Made by a program: the position numbers and the translations under genes. From contig NC_091285.1 in assembly GCF_032444005.1 (NCBI RefSeq), positions 19,902,001 to 19,966,000 of the forward strand: a stretch of 64,000 bases of DNA, given 5' to 3'. Source of the DNA: Ranitomeya imitator (Eukaryota). Each line of letters starts with the position of its first letter. Position 1 is the first letter of the stretch. The notes below the pieces were generated by a model. It was not told the DNA's origin, searched no databases, and saw nothing but the letters and a program-made list of their open reading frames with translations. This document shows, piece after piece, positions 1-61,834 of the stretch.

Positions 1-478
1 CCTAATGCTTTGATCCTGGCTTCCTGTCAATGTTCCAGTGTTGGACTTGTTTTTCCCTGGATCATTCCTGTGGCCTGCTGCTCTGCATAGCTAAGTTCTT
101 CTTTGCTATTTGTTTGCTATTTTTTCTGTCCAGCTTGTCTAATTATTTTGCTGGAAGCTCTGGGACGCAAAGGGTGTACCTCCGTGCCGTTAGTTCGGTA
201 CGGAGGGTCTTTTTGCCCCCTTTGCGTGGTTTTCTTTAGGGTTTTGTGTAGACCGCAAAGTTATCTTTCCTATCCTCGCTCTGTTAAGATAGTCGGGCCT
301 CACTTTGCTGAATCTATTTCATCCCTACGTTTGTCTTTTCATCTTACTCACAGTCATTATATGTGGGGGGCTGCCTTTTCCTTTGGGGTATTTCTCTGAG
401 GCAAGGTAGGCTTATTTTCTATCTTCAGGCTAGTTAGTTTCTCAGGCTGTGCCGAGTTGCATAGGCAGATTTAGGCCC
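1..478 (+). mobile_element. Partial, diverged LTR related to the Gypsy LTRs at 11983-22361
   Basis: Colinear with LTR1 12150-12636 (tgctttgatcctggc ... ctgtgccgagttgcatagg) with many substitutions. Cut by the window start and truncated on the right near 478. Confidence 0.9.
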
Positions 479-10500: not shown

Positions 10501-10795
10501 CCGGCAGCCCCATAACCGCTTCTGTCAGCCATCAATAGTGCTGGACAAGAGTAGTGTGGACCCCACTAATGAGAGCCGGGGGCTGCAGGGTCTGTGTGAG
10601 GAGCTGTGTATGTAATGCATATATCCAGGGGCCACATACTATGGGTGCAAGCACAGGGGCCGACAAGTGTAAGGGGCCACAGGCGCCTCCAGAGCAGCTG
10701 GGAGTAATGAGGGGCTGCGGACTGGGGGCCCAAATATTGTCCTGTACAGGAGCCCCGGCCTCTGCTCTCTCCTCCATCCGTCTCTGTATATTATG

Positions 10796-11600
10796 CTCCC
10801 TCTGTCTATTCTCTCTCATCTCTTTTCTCCTTTCTTCCTCTTTTCTCTCCTCCTCTCTCCTCTCTCTCCTCTCCTCTCATCACCTCTCTCTCTTCTCTCC
10901 TCTTTTCTCTCATTTCTTCTCTCCTCCTGCTCTGTTCCCTCTCTTCTGTCTCCTCTCTTTTCCTCTCTTCTCTTTCCTCTTCTCTCTCATCACCTCTCCT
11001 TTCCTTTTCTCTCCTCTTTTCTCTCTCTCCTTTCTTCTCTCTCCTCTCCTGTTCCCTCTCTTCTCTCTCTCACTCCTCTGTTCCCTCTCCTTTCCTCTCT
11101 TCTCTCTTTTCTCTCATCACTTCTCTCTCTCCTTTCTTCTCTCCTCTTTTCTCTCCTTTCTTCTCTCCTCTTTTCTCTCCTTTCTTCTCTCCTCTCCTGC
11201 TCTGTTCCCTCTCTTCTGTCTCTTCTCTCTCTCCTTTCCTCTCTTCTCTTTCCTCTTCTCTCTCAACACCTCTCTCCTCTCCTTTCTTCTCTCCTTCTCT
11301 TCCCTCTTTTCTCTCGCTCACTCCTCTGTTCCCTCTCTTCTCTCTCTCCTTTCCTCTCTTCTCTTTCCTCTCCTCTCTCTCATCACTTCTCTCTCCTTTC
11401 CTTCCTTCCCTCCTTTCTTCTTCCTCTTTTCCCTCTCCTTTCTTCTCTCTCCTCTCCTGTTCCTTCTCTCTCTCCTCTGTTCCCTCTCCTTTCTTCTCTC
11501 TCCTCTCCTGTTCCTTCTCTCTCTCCTCTGTTCCCTCTCCTCTCTCTTCTCTCCTTTCTTCTCTCCTCTTTTCTCTCCTTTCTTCTCTCTCTCACTCTCA
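10796..11600. repeat. About 800-bp polypyrimidine/polypurine (CT-rich) low-complexity tract
   Basis: Almost exclusively C/T on the + strand, with recurring sub-blocks such as ctcctgctctgttccctctcttctgtctc. Confidence 0.95.
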
Positions 11601-11667
11601 TCCAGTCTTTCTGGTGAGCTCAGGGCACCACAGACGCCATATTGTGGAGTGGGTGCAGCTATCGCAG

Positions 11668-11855
11668 TAATAATAATAATGATAATTTTTTATTTATATA
11701 GAGCCAACATATTCCGCAGCACTTTACAATTAAGCGGGGACATGTACAGACAATAAATTCAATACAAGTTAAGACAATTTAAACAGTGACATTAGGGGTG
11801 AGGTCCCTGCTCGCAAGCTTACAATCTACAAGGAAATGGGGGGACACAATAGGTG
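11668..11855 (-). mobile_element. L2-type 3' tail (5'-truncated LINE or SINE)
   Basis: (TAA)n, then ttttatttatata-gagccaacatattccgcagcactttac and ccctgctcgcaagcttacaatcta. Same family as 23540-23700 and 57589-57990. Confidence 0.75.
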
Positions 11856-11982
11856 GTCTTCAGAGTGGTCGGTGCAGGGTATATACAATGTCAAGGGAAT
11901 GAATGGAAATTACAAGTGGTCACATTAGATTATGAGGTGCATTAGATCAGCTGGTAAATCTGTGGCCTCCAGAAATGACCCC

Positions 11983-12800
11983 TGTTGTGAATTCTGTGGC
12001 CAAGCTCCCTCCTGTGGTCGTGAGTGGTACTGTGGCTGGTTCTGTCTATAAGCTTCCTTTGGTGGATGAGAGTGGTACTGCGGCTTCTGAGTTTCCTTCC
12101 TCAGGTGATGAGGTTAAGTCGTTAGGTGCTGCTCTATTTAACTCCACCTGGTGCTTTGATCCTGGCCTCCAGTCAATGTTCTAGTATTGGTCTTGCTTCC
12201 TCCTGGATCGTTCCTGTGGCCTCTCTATCCTGCATAAGCTAAGTTCTGCTTGTGTTATTTTTGTTTGCTATATTTTCTGTCCAGCTTGCTATATTGTTTT
12301 TTTCTTGCTTGCTGGAAGCTCTGAGACACAGAGGGAGCACCTCCGTACCGTTAGTCGGTGCGGAGGGTCTTTTTGCCCCTCTGCGTGGTTGTTTGTAGGT
12401 TTTTGTGTTGACCGCAAAGCTATCTTTCCTATCTTCGGTCTATTCAGTAAGTCGGGCCTCACTTTGCTAAATCTATTTCATCTCTGTGTTTGTATTTCAT
12501 CTTTACTCACAGTCATTATATGTGGGGGGCTGCCTTTTCCTTTGGGGAATTTCTCTGAGGCAAGGTAGGCTTATTTTTCTATCTTCAGGGCTAGTTAGTT
12601 TCTCAGGCTGTGCCCAGTTGCATAGGGAGCGTTAGGCGCAATCCACGGCTACCTCTAGTGTGGTGTGTTAGGATTAGGGATTGCGGTCAGCAGAGTTTCC
12701 ACGTCTCAGAGCTTGTCCTATGTTTTTGGTATATGTCAGGTCACCTTGTGTGCTCTGAACTTCAAGGTCCATTGTGGTTCTGAATTACCTGTTCATAACA
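11983..12800 (+). repeat. LTR1 (5')
   Basis: Starts tgttgtgaa, ends ttcataaca. TATA-like TATTTAA at 12135-12141. Confidence 0.97.
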
Positions 12801-12802
12801 GT

Positions 12803-12812
12803 ACTGGAGGCC
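12803..12812 (+). promoter_or_regulatory. Primer-binding site, self-priming type
   Basis: ACTGGAGGCC begins 2 nt after LTR1 and is the perfect reverse complement of LTR 12164-12173 (GGCCTCCAGT). Confidence 0.7.
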
Positions 12813-12936
12813 CAAAGTACTAATGCTTCTCAATAGAGAGAAAAGAGAAGTTCTGAGACCATTTTTTTTTCTTTGCACTGTGTTCTGTCTTTCTTTTCCC
12901 CTTTACATCAGGGTGGTTCAGAACACAGGTGTGGAC

Positions 12937-14865
12937 ATGGATATTAAGGGTCTGTCCTCTTTGATGGATAATCTCACTATAAGAGTACAGAACATTCAAG
13001 ATTTAGTGGTTCAGAATCCTATGTTAGAACCTAAAATTCCTATTCCTGAGTTATTTTCTGGAGATAGAGCTAAATTTTTGAATTTTAAAAATAATTGTAA
13101 ACTGTTTCTGGCTTTGAAACCCCGCTCCTCTGGTGACCCAGTTCAACAAGTTAAAATCATTATTTCTTTATTACGTGGCGACCCTCAAGACTGGGCATTT
13201 TCCCTTGCGCCAGGAGATCCTGCATTATGTAATATTGATGCGTTTTTTCTGGCGCTCGGATTGCTGTACGACGAACCTAATTCAGTGGATCAGGCAGAGA
13301 AAAATTTGCTGGCTCTGAGTCAGGGTCAGGATGAGATAGAGATTTATTGTCAGAAGTTTAGAAAGTGGTCCGTGCTCACTCAATGGAATGAATGTGCGCT
13401 GGCAGCTATTTTCAGAAAGGGTCTCTCTGAAGCCATTAAGGATGTCATGGTGGGATTTCCTATGCCTGCTGGTCTGAATGAGTCTATGTCTTTGGCTATT
13501 CAGATCGGTCGATGCTTGCGCGAGCGTAAATCTGTGCACCATTTGGCGGTATTATCTGAGCATAAACCTGAGCCAATGCAGTGCGATAGGACTTTGACCA
13601 GAGCTGAAAGGCAAGAACACAGACGTCAGAATGAGCTGTGTTTCTACTGTGGTGATTCCACTCATGCTATCTCCGATTGTCCTAAGCGCACTAAGCGGTT
13701 CGCTAGGTCTGCCACCATTGGTACGGTACAGTCGAAATTTCTTTTGTCCGTTACTTTGATCTGCTCTTTGTCTTCCTATTCTGTCATGGCATTTGTGGAT
13801 TCAGGCGCTGCCCTGAATTTGATGGACTTGGAGTATGCTAAGCGTTGTGGGTTTCTCTTAGAGCCCTTGCAGTGTCCTATTCCATTGAGAGGAATTGATG
13901 CTACGCCTTTGGCCAAGAATAAGCCTCAATACTGGACCCAGCTGACCATGTGCATGGCTCCTGCGCACCAGGAGGATATTCGCTTTCTGGTGTTGCATAA
14001 TCTGCATGATGTGGTCGTGTTGGGGTTGCCATGGCTACAAGTCCATAACCCAGTATTAGATTGGAAATCTATGTCTGTGTCCAGCTGGGGTTGTCAGGGG
14101 GTACATGGTGATGTTCCATTTTTGTCTATCTCATCATCGACCCCTTCTGAGGTCCCAGAGTTCTTGTCTGATTACCGGGATGTATTCGATGAGCCCAAGT
14201 CCAATGCCCTACCTCCGCATAGGGATTGTGATTGTGCTATCGATTTGATTCCTGGTAGTAAGTTTCCTAAGGGTCGACTGTTTAATTTATCTGTACCTGA
14301 GCACGCCGCTATGCGGAGTTACGTGAAGGAGTCTTTGGAGAAGGGTCATATTCGCCTGTCATCGTCGCCATTGGGAGCGGGTTTCTTTTTTGTGGCCAAG
14401 AAGGATGGTTCGCTGAGACCTTGTATTGATTACCGCCTTCTAAATAAAATTACGGTCACATTTCAGTACCCCTTGCCGCTGCTGTCTGATTTGTTCGCTC
14501 GGATTAAGGGGGCTAGTTGGTTCACCAAGATAGATCTTCGTGGTGCGTATAATCTTGTGCGTATCAAACGGGGCGATGAATGGAAAACAGCATTTAATAC
14601 GCCCGAAGGCCATTTTGAGTACCTGGTTATGCCATTCGGACTTTCTAATGCTCCATCAGTGTTTCAGTCCTTTATGCATGACATCTTCCGAGAGTACCTG
14701 GATAAATTCCTGATTGTATACTTGGATGATATTTTGGTCTTCTCGGATGATTGGGAGTCTCATGTGAAGCAGGGCAGAATGGTGTTCCGGGTCCTGCGTG
14801 CTAATTCTTTGTTTGTGAAGGGGTCAATTGGTCTTCTGCTGCTGTGGAAGCTTTTCAGGAGTTGA
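12937..14865 (+). pseudogene. Gag-protease-RT, copy 1, with RT C-terminal deletion and frameshift near 14825
   Basis: Zinc knuckle CFYCGDSTHAISDC, protease FVDSGA, RT YLDDILVFS. Jumps from LFVKGS directly to the NWSSAAVEAF region in another frame. The ATG at 12937 is conserved in both copies, whereas the one at 12823 is out of frame in copy 2. Confidence 0.92.
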
Positions 14866-16601
14866 AGCGTCGTTTTTCCTCTGCCCCTGTGTTGTGCCAA
14901 CCAGATATTTCGCTTCCGTTCCAGGTCGAGGTTGATGCTTCCGAAATTGGAGCAGGGGCTGTTTTGTCGCAGAGAAGTTCTGATTGCTCGGTGATGAAAC
15001 CATGCGCCTTCTTTTCCAGGAAATTTTCGCCTGCTGAGCGAAATTATGATGTTGGCAATCGAGAGTTGCTAGCCATGAAGTGGGCATTCGAGGAGTGGCG
15101 TCATTGGCTTGAAGGAGCTAAGCATCGCGTGGTGGTCTTGACTGATCACAAGAACTTGACTTATCTCGAGTCTGCCAAATGGTTGAATCCTAGACAGGCT
15201 CGTTGGTCGCTGTTTTTCTCCAGTTTTGACTTTGTGGTTTCGTACCTTCCGGGCTCTAAAAATGTGAAGGCGGATGCCCTGTCTAGGAGTTTTGTGCCCG
15301 ATTCTCCGGGTTTGTCTGAGCCGGCGGGTATTCTCAAAGAGGGGGTAATTTTGTCTGTCATCTCCCCTGATTTGCAGCGGGTGCTGCAAAAATTTCAGGC
15401 TAATAGACCTGACCGTTGCCCAGCGGAGAAACTGTTTGTCCCTGATAGGTGGACGAATAAAGTTATCTCTGAGGTTCGTTGTTCGGTGTTGGCTGGTCAT
15501 CCTGGAATCTTTGGTACCAGAGATTTGGTGGCTAGATCCTTTTGGTGGCCGTCTCTGTCGCGGGATGTGCGTTCTTTTGTGCAGTCCTGTGGGATTTGTG
15601 CTCGAGCTAAGCCCTGCTGTTCTCGTGCCAGTGGGTTGCTTTTGCCCTTGCCGGTCCCGAAGAGGCCTTGGACACATATCTCTATGGATTTTATTTCGGA
15701 TCTCCCCGTCTCTCAAAGAATGTCGGTCATTTGGGTGGTTTGTGATCGCTTCTCTAAGATGGTCCATTTGGTGCCCTTGTCTAAATTGCCTTCCTCCTCT
15801 GATTTGGTGCCATTGTTTTTTCAGCATGTGGTTCGTTTACATGGCATTCCAGAGAACATCGTTTCTGACAGAGGTTCCCAGTTTGTTTCGAGGTTTTGGC
15901 GAGCCTTTTGTGCTAGGATGGGCATTGATTTGTCTTTTTCCTCGGCTTTCCATCCTCAGACAAATGGCCAGACTGAACGAACCAATCAGACCTTGGAAAC
16001 ATATCTGAGATGTTTTGTTTCTGCTGATCAGGATGATTGGGTGTCCTTTTTGCCTTTGGCTGAGTTCGCCCTTAATAATCGGGCCAGCTCGGCTACTTTG
16101 GTTTCGCCGTTTTTCTGCAATTCTGGGTTCCACCCTCGTTTCTCTTCAGGGCAGGTTGAGTCTTCGGACTGTCCTGGTGTGGATACTGTGGTGGACAGGT
16201 TGCAGCAGATTTGGACTCATGTAGTGGACAATTTGACTTTGTCCCAGGAGAAGGCTCAACGTTTCGCTAACCGCAGGCGCTGTGTGGGTCCCCGACTTCG
16301 TGTTGGGGATTTGGTTTGGTTGTCATCTCGTTATATTCCTATGAAGGTTTCCTCTCCTAAATTTAAGCCTCGTTTCATTGGTCCATATAGGATTTCTGAG
16401 GTTCTTAATCCTGTGTCTTTTCGTTTGACTCTTCCGGCTTCTTTTTCCATCCATAACGTGTTCCATAGGTCATTCTTGCGGAGATACGTGGCACCTGTGG
16501 TTCCATCTATTGATCCTCCTGCTCCGGTTTTGGTTGAAGGGGAATTGGAGTATATTTTGGAGAAGATTTTGGATTCTCGTGTTTCGAGACGGAAACTCTA
16601 G
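14844..16601 (+). pseudogene. RNase H-integrase, copy 1, with premature TAG inside the chromodomain
   Basis: EVDASEIGAGAVL, ELLAMKWAFEEW, HPG...C..C zinc motif, SMDF/VSDRG/TERTN DDE core, RFIGPY (GPY/F), then [33 protein letters not shown]. Confidence 0.93.
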
Positions 16602-16749
16602 TTTCTGGTTAAGTGGAAAGGTTATGGTCAGGAAGATAATTCCTGGGTCTTTGCCTCTGATGTCCATGCTGCCGATCTGGTTCGTGCCTTTCATGTGGCT
16701 CATCCTGGTCGGCCTGGGGGCTCTGGTGATTGTTCGGTGACCCCTCCTC

Positions 16750-16759
16750 AAGGGGGGGG
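16750..16759 (+). promoter_or_regulatory. Polypurine tract, copy 1
   Basis: AAGGGGGGGG followed by TAC, then LTR2. Confidence 0.9.
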
Positions 16760-16762
16760 TAC

Positions 16763-17580
16763 TGTTGTGAATTCTGTGGCCAAGCTCCCTCCTGTGGTCG
16801 TGAGTGGTACTGCGGCTGGTTCTGTCTATAAGCTTCCTTTGGTGGATGAGAGTGGTACTGCGGCTTCTGAGTTTCCTTCCTCAGGTGATGAGGTTAAGTC
16901 GTTAGGTGCTGCTCTATTTAACTCCACCTGGTGCTTTGATCCTGGCCTCCAGTCAATGTTCTAGTATTGGTTTTGCTTCCTCCTGGATCGTTCCTGTGGC
17001 CTCTCTATCCTGCATAAGCTAAGTTATGCTTGTGTTATTTTTGTTTGCTATATTTTCTGTCCAGCTTGCTATATTGGTTTTTTCTTGCTTGCTGGAAGCT
17101 CTGAGACGCAGAGGGAGCACCTCCGTACCGTTAGTCGGTGCGGAGGGTCTTTTTGCCCCTCTGCGTGGTTGTTTGTAGGTTTTTGTGTTGACCGCAAAGC
17201 TATCTTTCCTATCCTCGGTCTATTCAGTAAGTCGGGCCTCACTTTGCTAAATCTATTTAATCTCTGTGTTTGTATTTCATCTTTACTCACAGTCATTATA
17301 TGTGGGGGGCTGCCTTTTCCTTTGGGGAATTTCTCTGAGGCAAGGTAGGCTTATTTTTCTATCTTCAGGGCTAGTTAGTTTCTCAGGCTGTGCCGAGTTG
17401 CATAGGGAGCGTTAGGCGCAATCCACGGCTACCTCTAGTGTGGTGTGTTAGGATTAGGGATTGCGGTCAGCAGAGTTTCCACGTCTCAGAGCTTGTCCTA
17501 TGTTTTTGGTATATGTCAGGTCACCTTGTGTGCTCTGAACTTCAAGGTCCATTGTGGTTCTGAATTACCTGTTCATAACA
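16763..17580 (+). repeat. LTR2 (shared central LTR)
   Basis: 818 bp, preceded by a PPT and followed by a PBS. Confidence 0.97.
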
Positions 17581-17717
17581 GTACTGGATGCCCAAAGTAC
17601 TAATGCTTCTCAATAGAGGGAAAAGAGAAGTTCTGAGACCATTTTTTTTTTCTTTGCACTGTGTTCTGTCTTTCTTTTCCCCTTTACATCAGGGTGGTTC
17701 AGAACACAGGTGTGGAC

Positions 17718-19646
17718 ATGGATATTCAGGGTCTGTCCTCTTTGATGGATAATCTCACTATAAGAGTACAGAACATTCAAGATTTAGTGGTTCAGAATCC
17801 TATGTTAGAACCTAAAATTCCTATTCCTGAGTTATTTTCCGGAGATAGAGCTAAATTTTTGAATTTTAAAAATAATTGTAAACTGTTTCTGGCTTTGAAA
17901 CCCCGCTCCTCTGGTGACCCAGTTCAACAAGTTAAAATCATTATTTCTTTATTACGTGGCGACCCTCAAGACTGGGCATTTTCCCTTGCGCCAGGAGATC
18001 CTGCATTATGTAATATTGATGCGTTTTTTCTGGCGCTCGGATTGCTGTACGACGAACCTAATTCAGTGGATCAGGCAGAGAAAAATTTGCTGGCTCTGAG
18101 TCAGGGTCAGGATGAGATAGAGATTTATTGTCAGAAGTTTAGAAAGTGGTCCGTGCTCACTCAATGGAATGAATGTGCGCTGGCAGCTATTTTCAGAAAG
18201 GGTCTCTCTGAAGCCATTAAGGATGTCATGGTGGGATTTCCTATGCCTGCTGGTCTGAATGAGTCTATGTCTTTGGCTATTCAGATCGGTCGACGCTTGC
18301 GCGAGCGTAAATCTGTGCACCATTTGGCGGTATTATCTGAGCATAAACCTGAGCCAATGCAGTGCGATAGGACTTTGACCAGAGCTGAAAGGCAAGAACA
18401 CAGACGTCAGAATGAGCTGTGTTTCTACTGTGGTGATTCCACTCATGCTATCTCCGATTGTCCTAAGCGCACTAAGCGGTTCGCTAGGTCTGCCACCATT
18501 GGTACGGTACAGTCGAAATTTCTTTTGTCCGTTACTTTGATCTGCTCTTTGTCTTCCTATTCTGTCATGGCATTTGTGGATTCAGGCGCTGCCCTGAATT
18601 TGATGGACTTGGAGTATGCTAGGCGCTGTGGGTTTGTCTTGGAGCCCTTGCAGTGTCCTATTCCATTGAGAGGAATTGATGCTACGCCTTTGGCCAAGAA
18701 TAAGCCTCAATACTGGACCCAGCTGACCATGTGCATGGCTCCTGCGCACCAGGAGGATATTCGCTTTCTGGTGTTGCATAATCTGCATGATGTGGTCGTG
18801 TTGGGGTTGCCATGGCTACAAGTCCATAACCCAGTATTAGATTGGAAATCTATGTCTGTGTCCAGCTGGGGTTGTCAGGGGGTACATGGTGATGTTCCAT
18901 TTTTGTCTATCTCATCATCGACCCCTTCTGAGGTCCCAGAGTTCTTGTCTGATTACCGGGATGTATTCGATGAGCCCAAGTCCAATGCCCTACCTCCGCA
19001 TAGGGATTGTGATTGTGCTATCGATTTGATTCCTGGTAGTAAGTTTCCTAAGGGTCGACTGTTTAATTTATCTGTACCTGAGCACGCCGCTATGCGGAGT
19101 TACGTGAAGGAGTCTTTGGAGAAGGGTCATATTCGCCTGTCATCGTCGCCATTGGGAGCGGGTTTCTTTTTTGTGGCCAAGAAGGATGGTTCGCTGAGAC
19201 CTTGTATTGATTACCGCCTTCTAAATAAAATTACGGTCACATTTCAGTACCCCTTGCCGCTGCTGTCTGATTTGTTCGCTCGGATTAAGGGGGCTAGTTG
19301 GTTCACCAAGATAGATCTTCGTGGTGCGTATAATCTTGTGCGTATCAAACGGGGCGATGAATGGAAAACAGCATTTAATACGCCCGAAGGCCATTTTGAG
19401 TACCTGGTTATGCCATTCGGACTTTCTAATGCTCCATCAGTGTTTCAGTCCTTTATGCATGACATCTTCCGAGAGTACCTGGATAAATTCCTGATTGTAT
19501 ACTTGGATGATATTTTGGTCTTCTCGGATGATTGGGAGTCTCATGTGAAGCAGGGCAGAATGGTGTTCCAGGTCCTGCGTGCTAATTCTTTGTTTGTGAA
19601 GGGGTCAATTGGTCTTCTGCTGCTGTGGAAGCTTTTCAGGAGTTGA
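17718..19646 (+). pseudogene. Gag-protease-RT, copy 2, same RT deletion near 19606
   Basis: Near-identical to copy 1, with the same ggggtc|aattgg junction. Confidence 0.92.
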
Positions 19647-21382
19647 AGCGTCGTTTTTCCTCTGCCCCTGTGTTGTGCCAACCAGATGTTTCACTTCCGT
19701 TCCAGGTCGAGGTTGATGCTTCCGAAATTGGAGCAGGGGCTGTTTTGTCGCAGAGAAGTTCTGATTGCTCGGTGATGAAACCATGCGCCTTCTTTTCCAG
19801 GAAATTTTCGCCTGCTGAGCGAAATTATGATGTTGGCAATCGAGAGTTGCTAGCCATGAAGTGGGCATTCGAGGAGTGGCGTCATTGGCTTGAAGGAGCT
19901 AAGCATCGCGTGGTGGTCTTGACTGATCACAAGAACTTGATTTATCTCGAGTCTGCCAAATGGTTGAATCCTAGACAGGCTCGTTGGTCGCTGTTTTTCT
20001 CCAGTTTTGACTTTGTGGTTTCGTACCTTCCGGGCTCTAAAAATGTGAAGGCGGATGCCCTGTCTAGGAGTTTTGTGCCCGATTCTCCGGGTTTGTCTGA
20101 GCCGGCGGGTATTCTCAAAGAGGGGGTAATTTTGTCTGTCATCTCCCCTGATTTGCAGCGGGTGCTGCAAAAATTTCAGGCTAATAGACCTGACCGTTGC
20201 CCAGCGGAGAAACTGTTTGTCCCTGATAGGTGGACGAATAAAGTTATCTCTGAGGTTCGTTGTTCGGTGTTGGCTGGTCATCCTGGAATCTTTGGTACCA
20301 GAGATTTGGTGGCTAGATCCTTTTGGTGGCCGTCTCTGTCGCGGGATGTGCGTTCTTTTGTGCAGTCCTGTGGGATTTGTGCTCGAGCTAAGCCCTGCTG
20401 TTCTCGTGCCAGTGGGTTGCTTTTGCCCTTGCCGGTCCCGAAGAGGCCTTGGACACATATCTCTATGGATTTTATTTCGGATCTCCCCGTCTCTCAAAGA
20501 ATGTCGGTCATTTGGGTGGTTTGTGATCGCTTCTCTAAGATGGTCCATTTGGTGCCCTTGTCTAAATTGCCTTCCTCCTCTGATTTGGTGCCATTGTTTT
20601 TTCAGCATGTGGTTCGTTTACATGGCATTCCAGAGAACATCGTTTCTGACAGAGGTTCCCAGTTTGTTTCGAGGTTTTGGCGAGCCTTTTGTGCTAGGAT
20701 GGGCATTGATTTGTCTTTTTCCTCGGCTTTCCATCCTCAGACAAATGGCCAGACTGAACGAACCAATCAGACCTTGGAAACATATCTGAGATGTTTTGTT
20801 TCTGCTGATCAGGATGATTGGGTGTCCTTTTTGCCTTTGGCTGAGTTCGCCCTTAATAATCGGGCCAGCTCGGCTACTTTGGTTTCGCCGTTTTTCTGCA
20901 ATTCTGGGTTCCACCCTCGTTTCTCTTCAGGGCAGGTTGAGTCTTCGGACTGTCCTGGTGTGGATACTGTGGTGGACAGGTTGCAGCAGATTTGGACTCA
21001 TGTAGTGGACAATTTGACTTTGTCCCAGGAGAAGGCTCAACGTTTCGCTAACCGCAGGCGCTGTGTGGGTCCCCGACTTCGTGTTGGGGATTTGGTTTGG
21101 TTGTCATCTCGTTATATTCCTATGAAGGTTTCCTCTCCTAAATTTAAGCCTCGTTTCATTGGTCCATATAGGATTTCTGAGGTTCTTAATCCTGTGTCTT
21201 TTCGTTTGACTCTTCCGGCTTCTTTTTCCATCCATAACGTGTTCCATAGGTCATTCTTGCGGAGATACGTGGCACCTGTGGTTCCATCTATTGATCCTCC
21301 TGCTCCGGTTTTGGTTGAAGGGGAATTGGAGTATATTTTGGAGAAGATTTTGGATTCTCGTGTTTCGAGACGGAAACTCTAG
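19625..21382 (+). pseudogene. RNase H-integrase, copy 2, same chromodomain TAG
   Basis: Near-identical to copy 1; TAG at 21380-21382. Confidence 0.93.
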
Positions 21383-21530
21383 TTTCTGGTTAAGTGGAAA
21401 GGTTATGGTCAGGAAGATAATTCCTGGGTCTTTGCCTCTGATGTCCATGCTGCCGATCTGGTTCGTGCCTTTCATGTGGCTCATCCTGGTCGGCCTGGGG
21501 GCTCTGGTGAGGGTTCGGTGACCCCTCCTC

Positions 21531-21540
21531 AAGGGGGGGG
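21531..21540 (+). promoter_or_regulatory. Polypurine tract, copy 2
   Basis: AAGGGGGGGG followed by TAC, then LTR3. Confidence 0.9.
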
Positions 21541-21543
21541 TAC

Positions 21544-22361
21544 TGTTGTGAATTCTGTGGCCAAGCTCCCTCCTGTGGTCGTGAGTGGTACTGCGGCTGG
21601 TTCTGTCTATAAGCTTCCTTTGGTGGATGAGAGTGGTACTGCGGCTTCTGAGTTTCCTTCCTCAGGTGATGAGGTTAAGTCGTTAGGTGCTGCTCTATTT
21701 AACTCCACCTGGTGCTTTGATCCTGGCCTCCAGTCAATGTTCTAGTATTGGTTTTGCTTCCTCCTGGATCGTTCCTGTGGCCTCTCTATCCTGCATAAGC
21801 TAAGTTATGCTTGTGTTATTTTTGTTTGCTATATTTTCTGTCCAGCTTGCTATATTGGTTTTTTCTTGCTTGCTGGAAGCTCTGAGACGCAGAGGGAGCA
21901 CCTCCGTACCGTTAGTCGGTGCGGAGGGTCTTTTTGCCCCTCTGCGTGGTTGTTTGTAGGTTTTTGTGTTGACCGCAAAGCTATCTTTCCTATCCTCGGT
22001 CTATTCAGTAAGTCGGGCCTCACTTTGCTAAATCTATTTCATCTCTGTGTTTGTATTTCATCTTTACTCACAGTCATTATATGTGGGGGGCTGCCTTTTC
22101 CTTTGGGGAATTTCTCTGAGGCAAGGTAGGCTTATTTTTCTATCTTCAGGGCTAGTTAGTTTCTCAGGCTGTGCCGAGTTGCATAGGGAGCGTTAGGCGC
22201 AATCCACGGCTACCTCTAGTGTGGTGTGTTAGGATTAGGGATTGCGGTCAGCAGAGTTTCCACGTCTCAGAGCTTGTCCTATGTTTTTGGTAAATGTCAG
22301 GTCACCTTGTGTGCTCTGAACTTCAAGGTCCATTGTGGTTCTGAATTACCTGTTCATAACA
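21544..22361 (+). repeat. LTR3 (3')
   Basis: 818 bp, followed by the GACCCC TSD. Confidence 0.97.
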
Positions 22362-22578
22362 GACCCCGGTCAGATCACTACAAAGGTGTCATCCTATAAT
22401 CTAGACCTCCTATGTGCGGGAGAGTGCAGGATTGCCATAAGTTTGGCAAATGAGACCCCAAGTGATCCAAAAATGGGGTACCAAAGTCCTGTGTGAATAA
22501 AGCATTACCGAGCATGTGACCAACTCTCCATATATACAGTATACCAGTTATACTATTCCTAAGTTATGTCCTATAAAA

Positions 22579-47966: not shown

Positions 47967-48288
47967 TTAAAAATGAAAGCTGAGCGGTGATTAGTTGCTA
48001 CGGGAAACACAGAGAAATGAGGCCTAGTGTACGCAAGGGTTAAAATTCCACCCTGTCCCCCTTTGACTCATGTTCCTCTAGAGATCTTACTCCTATTTTC
48101 AGGGTTTTGCCCTAAAAAACCAGCCATGTTTCCGCTTACGTGAGGAGCTGAATGTACACAATCCTATACAGAGAGCGGACAGGAAGCCGCCAGGTCAGGG
48201 CCGCACAGACACAAGTGACATCTTCAAGATGCAGGGCGGCGCCGTACTACAACGCCTAACGGAGCCTGAGGCTCATAACTATACTTAA

Positions 48289-60900: not shown

Positions 60901-61834
60901 GCATACTGTGCTCGTATAATACTGCTATATGGTATCATCATAATGGTGTCATACAGTGCTCATATAATACTGCTATATGGTATCATCATAATGGTGTCAT
61001 ACTGTGCTCGTATAATACTGCTATATGGTATCATCATAATGGTGTCATACTGTGCTCGTATAATACTGCTATATGGTATCTTCATAATGGTGGCATACTG
61101 TGCTCGTATAATACTGCTATATGGTATCATCATAATGGTGTCATACAGTGCTCATATAATACTGCTATATGGTATCATCATAATGGTGTCATACAGTGCT
61201 CATATAATACTGCTATATGGTATCATCATAATGGTGTCATACAGTGCTCGTATAATACTGCTATATGGTATCATCATAATGGTGTCATACAGTGCTCATA
61301 TAATACTGTTATACGTTATCTACTTGTGCTCATATAAAACTGCTATAAAAAGAGCTCGGCCTCCAGTATCACACAGGAACAGCTCAGATACACCATGTCA
61401 TCATACTGTATGTAGGATTAGCTTAGATACAACAGGTCAGAGCACTGTATCACACAGGAAAGGCTTGGATACACTAATTCCACAGACAGGAAAATACTGG
61501 ACATGTCTAAATACATCAACTTAGCAGACAGTGTCACACATGACAGACTTAGATACAGGAGCTAAGCAAAAATTATCACACAGGATAAGCTTAGATACAT
61601 TAGGTCAACAGAATACTACACATAGCAGGCTTAGATACATTATCTGAACAAACAGTACGTCACATGGTAGGCTTAGATACACCAATAAATTGCATTGTGT
61701 CTGGAGAAATTGTGGATAGGATTGGATACACCCGATCAACAGACTGTATCACACAGAAGATTAGATACATCAGCTAAACTGACAGTATTGTATAGAATTA
61801 GCTTAGATACAGTAGCTCAGCAGAAGTAATCACA

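What the first reader, a model, noticed from the sequence alone, without database searches (positions are those of the whole stretch)
12135..12820. Gypsy element appears to prime reverse transcription with its own 5' end (no tRNA)
Seen: the 10 nt starting 2 nt after the LTR (ACTGGAGGCC, 12803-12812) are the exact reverse complement of LTR 12164-12173. That segment begins 29 nt after a TATA-like TATTTAA (12135), where the transcription start is expected. The pairing polarity points the primer 3' end into U5. The LTR is flanked symmetrically by gtAC|TG...CA|GTac, which fits a 2-nt extension. Established: S. pombe Tf1 self-primes in this way, and the mechanism has been proposed for the Tf1/sushi chromovirus group. 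Inference: this amphibian chromovirus family is self-priming.
Basis: partly seen in the sequence, partly recalled or inferred. Interest (0 to 1): 0.8.

Follow-up and report, generated by a model that had tools for sequence, protein, structure and literature searches.

The report
Self-priming chromovirus in a poison frog
A very abundant frog jumping gene of the Ty3/gypsy type appears to start copying itself with the first 10 letters of its own RNA rather than a borrowed tRNA, a trick already known from its yeast and fish relatives, so this is a new example and not a new mechanism.

Summary
**Verdict: observation confirmed, interpretation supported, mechanism already known.**

- **The pairing is real.** ACTGGAGGCC (12803-12812), 2 nt after the 5' LTR (11983-12800), is the exact reverse complement of GGCCTCCAGT (12164-12173). 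That segment starts 29 nt after the LTR's only TATTTAA (12135).
- **Chance.** A match this long occurs in 1.4% of LTR shuffles, before the TATA position is counted.
- **Folding.** The 10-bp helix is predicted with pair probability 0.89-1.0, closing a 629-nt R-U5 domain.
- **The element.** It is a defective chromovirus (gag-PR-RT, then RH-IN-SH3-chromodomain) in a tandem LTR-int-LTR-int-LTR array within one target duplication. The host is probably Ranitomeya imitator.
- **Relatives.** I could not fetch frog subfamily copies. I fetched 7 fish-assembly and 80 metagenome relatives.
  - 18 loci carry the same signature on the coding strand: a TATA box, a primer 26-36 nt after it, and a 10-12-nt PBS after LTR-end CA plus G, GT or GA.
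  - None carries it on the opposite strand, and 0-1 do in shuffles.
  - With the frog and L018 there are 12 PBS types. Only the frog's contains TGG.
  - The frog sits in a 100/100 RT clade with the fish elements.
- **Known mechanism.** Self-priming is established for Tf1 and proposed for the Tf1/sushi group.
- **Rival.** A 9-nt match to the tRNA-Thr 3' end overlaps the PBS.
- **Not tested.** The transcription start and covariation within the frog family.
- **Earlier scan notes.** Unchecked notes report the same signature elsewhere in this genome.

The parts
11977..11982 (+). Left target-site duplication GACCCC. It could be a 5-bp GACCC plus one retained C.
   Evidence: Same hexamer at 22362-22367 directly after the third LTR.
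11983..12800 (+). 5' LTR, 818 bp, TG...CA. Predicted U3 is 11983-12163 (181 nt) and R-U5 is 12164-12800 (637 nt).
   Evidence: Three copies at 98.8-99% identity. The U3 length equals that of fish relatives L012 and L016 (181 nt).
12135..12141 (+). TATA-like box TATTTAA. It is the only TAT[AT][AT]A motif in the LTR.
   Evidence: The same heptamer sits 30-33 nt before the primer motif in fish relatives L013, L014, L015 and L017.
12164..12173 (+). Putative self-primer GGCCTCCAGT. It is the predicted first 10 nt of the transcript (start of R).
   Evidence: Exact reverse complement of 12803-12812. It lies 29 nt after the TATA box. It is paired with the PBS in the MFE and centroid folds, with pair probability 0.89-1.0.
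12801..12802 (+). GT spacer between the LTR end (CA) and the PBS.
   Evidence: The same CA|GT|PBS arrangement is found in 11 metagenome relatives.
12803..12812 (+). Primer-binding site ACTGGAGGCC.
12805..12813 (+). Rival reading: TGGAGGCCC, a 9-nt complement of the 3' end of tRNA-Thr (...GGGCCTCCA).
   Evidence: The tRNA-Thr-TGT-1-1 sequence printed in PMC10359600 ends CTGGGGCCTCCA. The 10th position mismatches.
12937..14865 (+). gag-protease-reverse transcriptase reading frame. The listed ORF starts at 12823 and the likely Met is at 12937.
   Evidence: Pfam Retrotrans_gag, gag-asp_proteas and RVT_1. It is 36-39% identical to fish elements whose gag carries RTL1-8_LDOC and PEG10 capsid families.
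14844..16601 (+). RNase H-integrase-SH3(Tf2-1) reading frame. It is in another frame than RT, so the frame is broken at 14844-14865. It ends at an in-frame stop at 16599-16601.
   Evidence: Pfam RT_RNaseH, Integrase_H2C2, rve and SH3_Tf2-1. The same breaks are present in the second unit.
16602..16694 (+). Rest of the chromodomain, after the in-frame stop.
   Evidence: Pfam Chromo PF00385, E 1.6e-6, 28.4 bits against a cut-off of 25.1, residues 1-31 of the piece.
16750..16762 (+). Polypurine tract AAGGGGGGGG followed by TAC, just before the middle LTR.
   Evidence: The same sequence precedes the third LTR. The commonest loose-end letters before the LTR in the DNA-run contigs (agreement 0.5) are a run of G followed by TA (table 7).
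16763..17580 (+). Middle LTR, with the primer motif at 16944-16953.
17583..17592 (+). PBS of the second unit, ACTGGATGCC, with one mismatch to the primer motif at 17589.
21544..22361 (+). 3' LTR, with the primer motif at 21725-21734.
22362..22367 (+). Right target-site duplication GACCCC.

Best explanation
**What it is.** This is a Tf1/sushi-type self-priming chromovirus of a dendrobatid frog.

**Proposed mechanism (steps 1-5 are inferred from Tf1; none was observed here).**
1. Transcription starts about 29 nt after TATTTAA, at or next to 12164.
2. The first 10 nt of the RNA (GGCCUCCAGU) fold back over the 629-nt R-U5 domain and pair with ACUGGAGGCC, which lies 2 nt past U5.
3. The element's RNase H cuts the RNA just after the duplex.
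4. The freed 3' end primes minus-strand DNA through GT into U5.
5. The plus strand later copies the RNA primer. Each new copy therefore receives a PBS that matches its parent's transcript start. This would explain why PBS and LTR motif stay complementary while both change between families.

**State of this copy.** It is defective and sits in a tandem LTR-int-LTR-int-LTR array.
For: **Shown in this element.**
- Exact 10-nt complement at a fixed distance after the LTR. It occurs in 1.4% of shuffles before the TATA position is counted.
- The LTR has a single TATA-like motif, 29 nt upstream of the complement.
- The helix is in the MFE and centroid folds, with pair probability 0.89-1.0 whichever 5' end is assumed. 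The domain z-score is -7.4.
- Domain order is PR-RT-RH-IN-SH3-chromo.

**Shown in relatives.**
- Six of the seven fish-assembly elements have U3 of 170-200 nt, a TATA box 28-31 nt before GCGAAGTCTT, and the PBS AAGACTTCGC 1 nt after ...ACA. None has TGG. The seventh (L014) has a 1-nt mismatch in the motif.
- Eighteen loci carry the strict signature on the coding strand, none on the opposite strand, and 0-1 in shuffles. They hold 10 distinct PBS sequences.
- Compensated differences separate L053, L054 and L066. Three double changes separate the fish elements from L018.
- The frog RT lies in a 100/100 clade with the fish elements and L018-L022.

**Literature.**
- In Tf1 the first 11 bases pair with the PBS and RNase H cuts between bases 11 and 12 (PMC7175516).
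- Self-priming is a common feature of Tf1/sushi elements (PMC10085805; PMC4600332; PMC6317226).
Against: - **No transcript start evidence.** All available runs were contigs and showed no starts or ends.
- **No frog-family covariation test.** Frog subfamily copies were not retrievable. The only diverged LTR in the window (1-476, motif GGCTTCCTGT) is truncated before its PBS.
- **A tRNA-like overlap.** Unlike every relative's PBS, the frog PBS contains TGG. It matches tRNA-Thr over 9 nt.
- **No pretzel arms.** The flanking duplexes of the Tf1 'pretzel' were no better than shuffles, in the frog or in relatives.
- **No poly(A) signal.** No AATAAA-like signal is found in the LTR, so R cannot be delimited.
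- **Low family diversity.** The fish elements all share one PBS type, so the number of independent families near the frog is small.
Confidence: 0.8

Rival explanations
1. **tRNA-Thr priming.** The PBS is TGGAGGCCC (12805-12813), 4 nt after the LTR. The complement in the LTR has no role in priming.
For: - TGG followed by a 6-nt match to the acceptor end of tRNA-Thr-TGT (...GGGGCCTCCA; PMC10359600).
- I estimate a 9-nt tRNA-end match at a few offsets to be itself unlikely by chance, about 0.2%. That is my estimate, not a computed figure.
Against: - Only 9 nt match, and the next base mismatches. In general knowledge, a young tRNA-primed copy inherits a longer PBS copied from the tRNA. This copy has LTRs that are 99% alike.
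- The site would start 4 nt after CA. Relatives start theirs 1-2 nt after CA.
- None of the 11 other PBS types in relatives has TGG.
- It leaves unexplained the 10-nt LTR complement and its TATA spacing.
No tRNA gene lies in the window.
Confidence: 0.08
2. **Dual or transitional priming.** The self-primer GGCCUCCAGU mimics the tRNA-Thr 3' end (GGCCUCCA), so the same PBS can take either primer. Alternatively, the family passed through a tRNA-Thr-primed stage.
For: - The 8-nt core GGCCTCCA is shared by the LTR motif and the tRNA-Thr 3' end.
- The frog PBS is the only one of 12 types with TGG.
Against: - This rests on one short similarity noticed after the fact.
- No relative shows anything like it.
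- No frog tRNA sequence was checked.
Confidence: 0.07
3. **Chance complementarity.** Priming uses something else, such as an internal tRNA segment or a nick.
For: - A 10-nt complement alone appears in 1.4% of shuffles.
- 10-mers shared between the LTR and other nearby sequence are common.
Against: - The position after the single TATA box.
- The CA|GT|PBS context shared with relatives, and the strand-specific recurrence of the whole signature: 18 loci against 0.
- The near-certain predicted helix.
Confidence: 0.05

Closest known systems
Tf1 and Tf2 of Schizosaccharomyces pombe, the founding self-priming chromoviruses
   Same: - Ty3/gypsy order with a C-terminal chromodomain.
- The PBS just after the 5' LTR is complementary to a short segment of the LTR taken to be the transcript's first bases.
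- No tRNA is needed.
- In Tf1 the first 11 bases pair with the PBS and RNase H cuts between bases 11 and 12 (PMC7175516).
   Different: - 10 bp here instead of 11.
- The fold-back spans 629 nt here, far more than in the short Tf1 leader (from my own knowledge).
- The two flanking 'pretzel' duplexes were not detectable above shuffles.
- Nothing here is shown by experiment.
Vertebrate Tf1/sushi group: sushi-ichi of pufferfish and relatives (Butler et al. 2001, cited in PMC4600332 and PMC10085805)
   Same: - Vertebrate chromoviruses for which self-priming was proposed from sequence.
- The fish relatives found here carry gag families RTL1-8_LDOC and PEG10 capsid, which mark sushi-like gag.
- The frog RT groups with them at 100/100 support.
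   Different: - No named sushi reference sequence was available, so direct placement beside sushi-ichi was not done.
- The frog LTR is longer (818 against 376-498 bp).
- It lacks the AATAAA that the fish LTRs carry 44-49 nt before their end.
- The spacer is GT instead of G.
- The PBS contains TGG.
Tj1 of S. japonicus and Tcn1-like elements
   Same: Self-priming was inferred in the same way, from PBS complementarity to a 5' LTR segment (PMC4600332; PMC6317226).
   Different: These are fungal or plant hosts. Tj1 was shown to be active in a transposition assay. This frog copy is broken.

Membership tests
Tf1/sushi group of chromoviruses (self-priming Ty3/gypsy elements) | Ty3/gypsy domain order gag-PR-RT-RH-IN. 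| tested here: met
   - Pfam: Retrotrans_gag, aspartyl protease, RVT_1, RT_RNaseH, Integrase_H2C2, rve, SH3_Tf2-1.
- The best solved relative is Ty3 Gag-Pol.
Tf1/sushi group of chromoviruses (self-priming Ty3/gypsy elements) | Chromodomain at the integrase C-terminus. | tested here: met
   - PF00385, E 1.6e-6, above the cut-off, in 16602-16694.
- It is interrupted by an in-frame stop at 16599-16601 in both units.
- Family members in the protein database also carry PF00385.
Tf1/sushi group of chromoviruses (self-priming Ty3/gypsy elements) | PBS next to the 5' LTR that is complementary to a segment of the element's own LTR. | tested here: met
   10 of 10 nt, 2 nt after CA. This occurs in 1.4% of shuffles.
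Tf1/sushi group of chromoviruses (self-priming Ty3/gypsy elements) | The complementary segment is the very 5' end of the mRNA. | tested here: inconclusive
   - Only indirect support: it lies 29 nt after the single TATA-like box, and relatives show the same spacing.
- The reads available were contigs and showed no starts.
Tf1/sushi group of chromoviruses (self-priming Ty3/gypsy elements) | PBS and primer segment change together among related elements. | tested here: met
   - Between families: 12 PBS types, each matched in its own LTR.
- Within the frog family this was not testable.
Tf1/sushi group of chromoviruses (self-priming Ty3/gypsy elements) | Three-duplex 'pretzel' RNA structure around the primer-PBS duplex (PMC10085805). 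| tested here: inconclusive
   - The central duplex is predicted with probability 0.89-1.0.
- The flanking duplexes are no better than shuffles in the frog and in 12 relatives. This was a crude test.
Tf1/sushi group of chromoviruses (self-priming Ty3/gypsy elements) | RNase H cleavage of the RNA after the primer, and cDNA carrying that RNA primer. | not testable with these tools
   Needs biochemistry on particles or cDNA.
Tf1/sushi group of chromoviruses (self-priming Ty3/gypsy elements) | Phylogenetic placement with named Tf1 or sushi references. | not tested
   - No named reference sequence could be brought in.
- Indirect support: a 100/100 RT clade with fish elements that have sushi-like gag families.
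tRNA-primed LTR retrotransposons | PBS beginning TGG and complementary to about 11-18 nt of a tRNA 3' end. | tested here: not met
   - 9 nt against the mammalian tRNA-Thr-TGT-1-1 printed in PMC10359600.
- Frog tRNAs were not available, so a slightly longer match cannot be excluded.

The most novel reading that the evidence does not exclude
The frog family's self-primer is a mimic of the tRNA-Thr 3' end (shared core GGCCUCCA). One PBS would then serve both its own 5' end (10 nt) and tRNA-Thr (9 nt). That would make it a dual-primer element, or a living intermediate between tRNA priming and self-priming.
Probability: 0.07. Interest if true: 0.7.

Novelty: new member of a known kind. Interest (0 to 1): 0.3.

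Why it matters
**Ordinary in mechanism.** Self-priming is the textbook oddity of the Tf1/sushi group and was already proposed for vertebrate members.

**What this adds.**
- **An amphibian family with very many copies.** 47,709 contigs of one DNA run lie on 1.2 kb of it. It comes from a frog with a very large, repeat-rich genome (general knowledge), so primer independence from tRNA may be relevant to its success.
- **A reusable detector.** The signature is a TATA box, then a primer 26-36 nt after it, then LTR-end CA plus G, GT or GA, then a PBS of 10-12 nt. It picked out 18 relatives with no hit on the opposite strand. It could be used to annotate such elements.

**The one point with more than routine interest.** The primer resembles the tRNA-Thr 3' end. 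That resemblance is unproven.

Tried and rejected
- **Frog copies of other subfamilies.** Four look-ups of Ranitomeya imitator proteins returned no DNA because the file was too large.
- **Gag-only protein search.** It found only the same frog proteins and one Logan family, P0128. That family's contigs L001-L010 gave an unclear picture: a 10-nt complement without a TATA box, absent in a variant.
- **Reads.**
  - All four runs were contigs, so there were no starts or ends and no linkage between the two 10-mers.
  - None of the 40 best-supported variant sites falls in either 10-mer, but 193 more sites were not shown.
- **Collection scans.** A viral contig scan and a metagenome pattern search for the frog LTR end plus a variable PBS both found nothing.
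- **Literature search for the PBS string.** It gave nothing useful.
- **Diverged LTR at 1-476.** Its motif is GGCTTCCTGT, but it is truncated and has no PBS. The predicted partner ACAGGAAGCC at 48179 is not in an LTR-end context.
- **Other occurrences of the motif.** GGCCTCCAGT at 61358 and TGGCCTCCAG in the left flank (11963-11972) are at chance level.
- **DNA alignment of frog and fish U3.** It is too diverged to support homology claims beyond the TGT start.
- **Pretzel flanking duplexes.** They were no better than shuffles.
- **tRNA genes.** No tRNA gene lies in the window.
- **Founding papers.** The Tf1 papers PMC230564 and PMC109269 are not held.

Full report
**1. The observation**

Reading the window and searching motifs confirms every stated fact.
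- ACTGGAGGCC lies at 12803-12812.
- Its exact reverse complement GGCCTCCAGT lies at 12164-12173.
- TATTTAA lies at 12135-12141, so the complement starts 29 nt after its first T.
- The LTR ends CA at 12799-12800, followed by GT.

The complement is exactly 10 bp. The neighbours on both sides do not pair.

- In 20,000 dinucleotide-preserving shuffles of the LTR, a complement of 10 nt or more at any of nine offsets after the LTR appeared in 1.4%.
- The LTR has only one TAT[AT][AT]A motif.
- A hit that also falls about 30 nt after it is roughly fifty to a hundred times rarer still.

**2. What the element is**

Self-comparison shows three LTR copies: 11983-12800, 16763-17580 and 21544-22361. Each is 818 bp, reads TG...CA, and they are 98.8-99% alike. 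They are spaced 4,780 bp apart.

- The structure is a tandem LTR-int-LTR-int-LTR array within one target duplication, GACCC(C).
- Each internal LTR is preceded by AAGGGGGGGG-TAC.
- Each internal part holds gag-protease-RT in one frame and RNase H-integrase-SH3(Tf2-1) in another. The frame breaks at 14844-14865.
- An in-frame stop at 16599-16601 cuts a chromodomain. Its remainder scores above the Pfam cut-off.
- Both units share these breaks, so the copy is defective.
- The second unit's PBS has one mismatch, at 17589.

The closest proteins are 64-97% identical products annotated in Ranitomeya imitator, many with a chromodomain. The host is therefore this frog or a near relative.

The family has very many copies. 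47,709 contigs of one DNA run lie on 1.2 kb of it.

**3. Does the RNA fold that way?**

- Folding 12164-12830 puts the 10-bp helix in both the minimum-energy and the centroid structures. It closes a 629-nt domain that is much more stable than shuffles, with z = -7.4.
- Pair probabilities are 0.89-1.0. They do not depend on the assumed 5' end: 12164, 12150, 12120 and 11983 give the same result.

**4. Comparative test**

Frog copies could not be fetched, and the reads gave no linkage and no starts. I therefore went one level up, to relatives.

*Fish-assembly relatives.* Seven elements from four assemblies are 36-39% identical to the frog over gag-PR-RT. Their gag carries the RTL1-8_LDOC and PEG10 capsid families. 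They share one architecture:
- U3 of 170-200 nt. It is 181 nt in L012 and L016, as in the frog.
- A TATA box (TATTTAA, TATAAG or TATATAAA) 28-31 nt before GCGAAGTCTT, in the six elements with an intact motif.
- AATAAA 44-49 nt before the LTR end.
- LTR end ...ACA, one G, then AAGACTTCGC.
- The match is 10 of 10 in six elements. The oldest, L014, has one mismatch.
- None has TGG, so a tRNA 3' end cannot be the primer.
- In those six elements the minimum-energy fold pairs primer and PBS.

*Metagenome relatives.* A scan with a protein alignment brought 80 more relatives. I defined a strict signature:
- an exact complement of 10 nt or more, 80-1000 nt apart;
- the downstream arm directly after CA plus G, GT or GA;
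- a TATA-like motif 26-36 nt before the upstream arm.

The result:

| Test | Loci with the signature |
|---|---|
| Coding strand | 18 |
| Opposite strand | 0 |
| Block-shuffled copies (5 replicates) | 0-1 each |

These loci hold 10 different PBS sequences, none with TGG.

L018 adds another type, AAGATCTGGC paired with GCCAGATCTT. It has TATTTATAG about 31 nt upstream, but its LTR ends TA. With the frog that makes 12 types.

Close pairs differ by compensated changes:
- L053 has ATTAACAAACT with AGTTTGTTAAT.
- L054 has ATTACAAACT with AGTTTGTAAT.
- L066 has ATTTTCAAACT with AGTTTGAAAAT.
- The fish type and L018 differ at three positions, and all three changes are matched on the other arm.

*Tree.* In an RT tree the frog element sits in a 100/100 clade with the fish elements and L018-L022. 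Its branch is long, so its exact place inside that clade is unsure.

*Fit of the frog element.* It matches this architecture in every measurable feature:
- 181-nt U3;
- TATTTAA at -29;
- 10-nt primer;
- ...AACA|GT|PBS, the same GT spacer as 11 metagenome relatives.

**5. Mechanism**

The best reading is Tf1-type self-priming. [quoted passage not shown] The literature calls this a common feature of the Tf1/sushi group, implicated from fungi to vertebrates (PMC10085805; PMC4600332; PMC6317226).

- **Shown here:** the complementarity, its place relative to the TATA box, the predicted helix, and between-family covariation.
- **Inferred:** the transcript start, the cleavage, and the priming itself.

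The GT after the LTR and the AC before it would be copied into the ends of the linear DNA. This is plausible but untested.

**6. Rivals**

The frog PBS is the only one of the 12 types that contains TGG.
- TGGAGGCCC (12805-12813) is a 9-nt complement of the tRNA-Thr 3' end (...CTGGGGCCTCCA; PMC10359600).
- Nine nt is short for a young tRNA-primed copy.
- It would start 4 nt after CA instead of the 1-2 nt seen in relatives.
- It leaves the LTR complement unexplained.
- I give tRNA-Thr priming 0.08.

The shared core GGCCTCCA between the self-primer and tRNA-Thr is unexpected by my rough estimate. It keeps a dual-primer or transitional reading alive at 0.07. Pure chance gets 0.05.

**7. Open points**

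- The two flanking duplexes of the Tf1 'pretzel' were not detectable above shuffles, in the frog or in relatives.
- No AATAAA-like hexamer is present in the frog LTR, so the R/U5 border is unknown.
- The diverged LTR at 1-476 (85.5% identical, motif GGCTTCCTGT) would be a built-in covariation test. It is truncated before its PBS.

**8. Verdict**

- This is a new member of a known kind, so interest is modest.
- Unchecked notes of this scan report the same signature in other windows of this genome: s1-312584, s1-307486, s1-288357 and s1-307428. I could not see their sequences.

Noticed in passing
window 53263 to about 60900: A long satellite array with a 48-bp period: about 158 overlapping placements of a 300-nt reference stepping by 48 bp, mostly 92-97% alike.
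   Followed up: no
window 11983-22361: LTR 1 carries 7 private differences, while LTRs 2 and 3 have one each. At five of the 7 sites (12033, 12297, 12328, 12434, 12615) LTRs 2 and 3 hold the letter that most family contigs hold. This asymmetry is odd for a single insertion.
   Followed up: partly
window 11977-11982 and 22362-22367: The duplication reads as 6 bp (GACCCC), whereas fish relatives L012 and L016 have 5 bp (ACATC, CCATC). One reading is a 5-bp GACCC plus one retained C from the AC that precedes the LTR in the cDNA.
   Followed up: no
window 11983-12800: No AATAAA, ATTAAA or common variant occurs anywhere in the 818-bp LTR. All fish relatives carry AATAAA or ATTAAA 44-49 nt before the LTR end. 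How the frog transcript's 3' end is made is unexplained.
   Followed up: partly
window 1-476: A truncated LTR of a diverged subfamily, 85.5% identical to 12152-12637. It has two changes in the primer motif (GGCTTCCTGT) and ends at 476 with no PBS.
   Followed up: yes
window 10550-11760: Internally repetitive stretch just left of the element. Many overlapping self-matches at 74-83% identity and a 400-aa open frame at 10554-11756.
   Followed up: no
window 12164-12800: The R-U5 domain folds far better than shuffles (z = -7.4 on 20 shuffles). Another note of the scan (s1-295372) claims compensatory changes at 12316-12714.
   Followed up: no
L011-L017 (fish assemblies GCA_977065575.1, GCA_977066275.1, GCA_977066305.1, GCA_977066385.1): A fish chromovirus clade keeps the same 10-nt primer and PBS pair (GCGAAGTCTT with AAGACTTCGC) in all seven elements sampled (one with a single mismatch). 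They come from several distinct protein clusters and subclades of the RT tree.
   Followed up: partly
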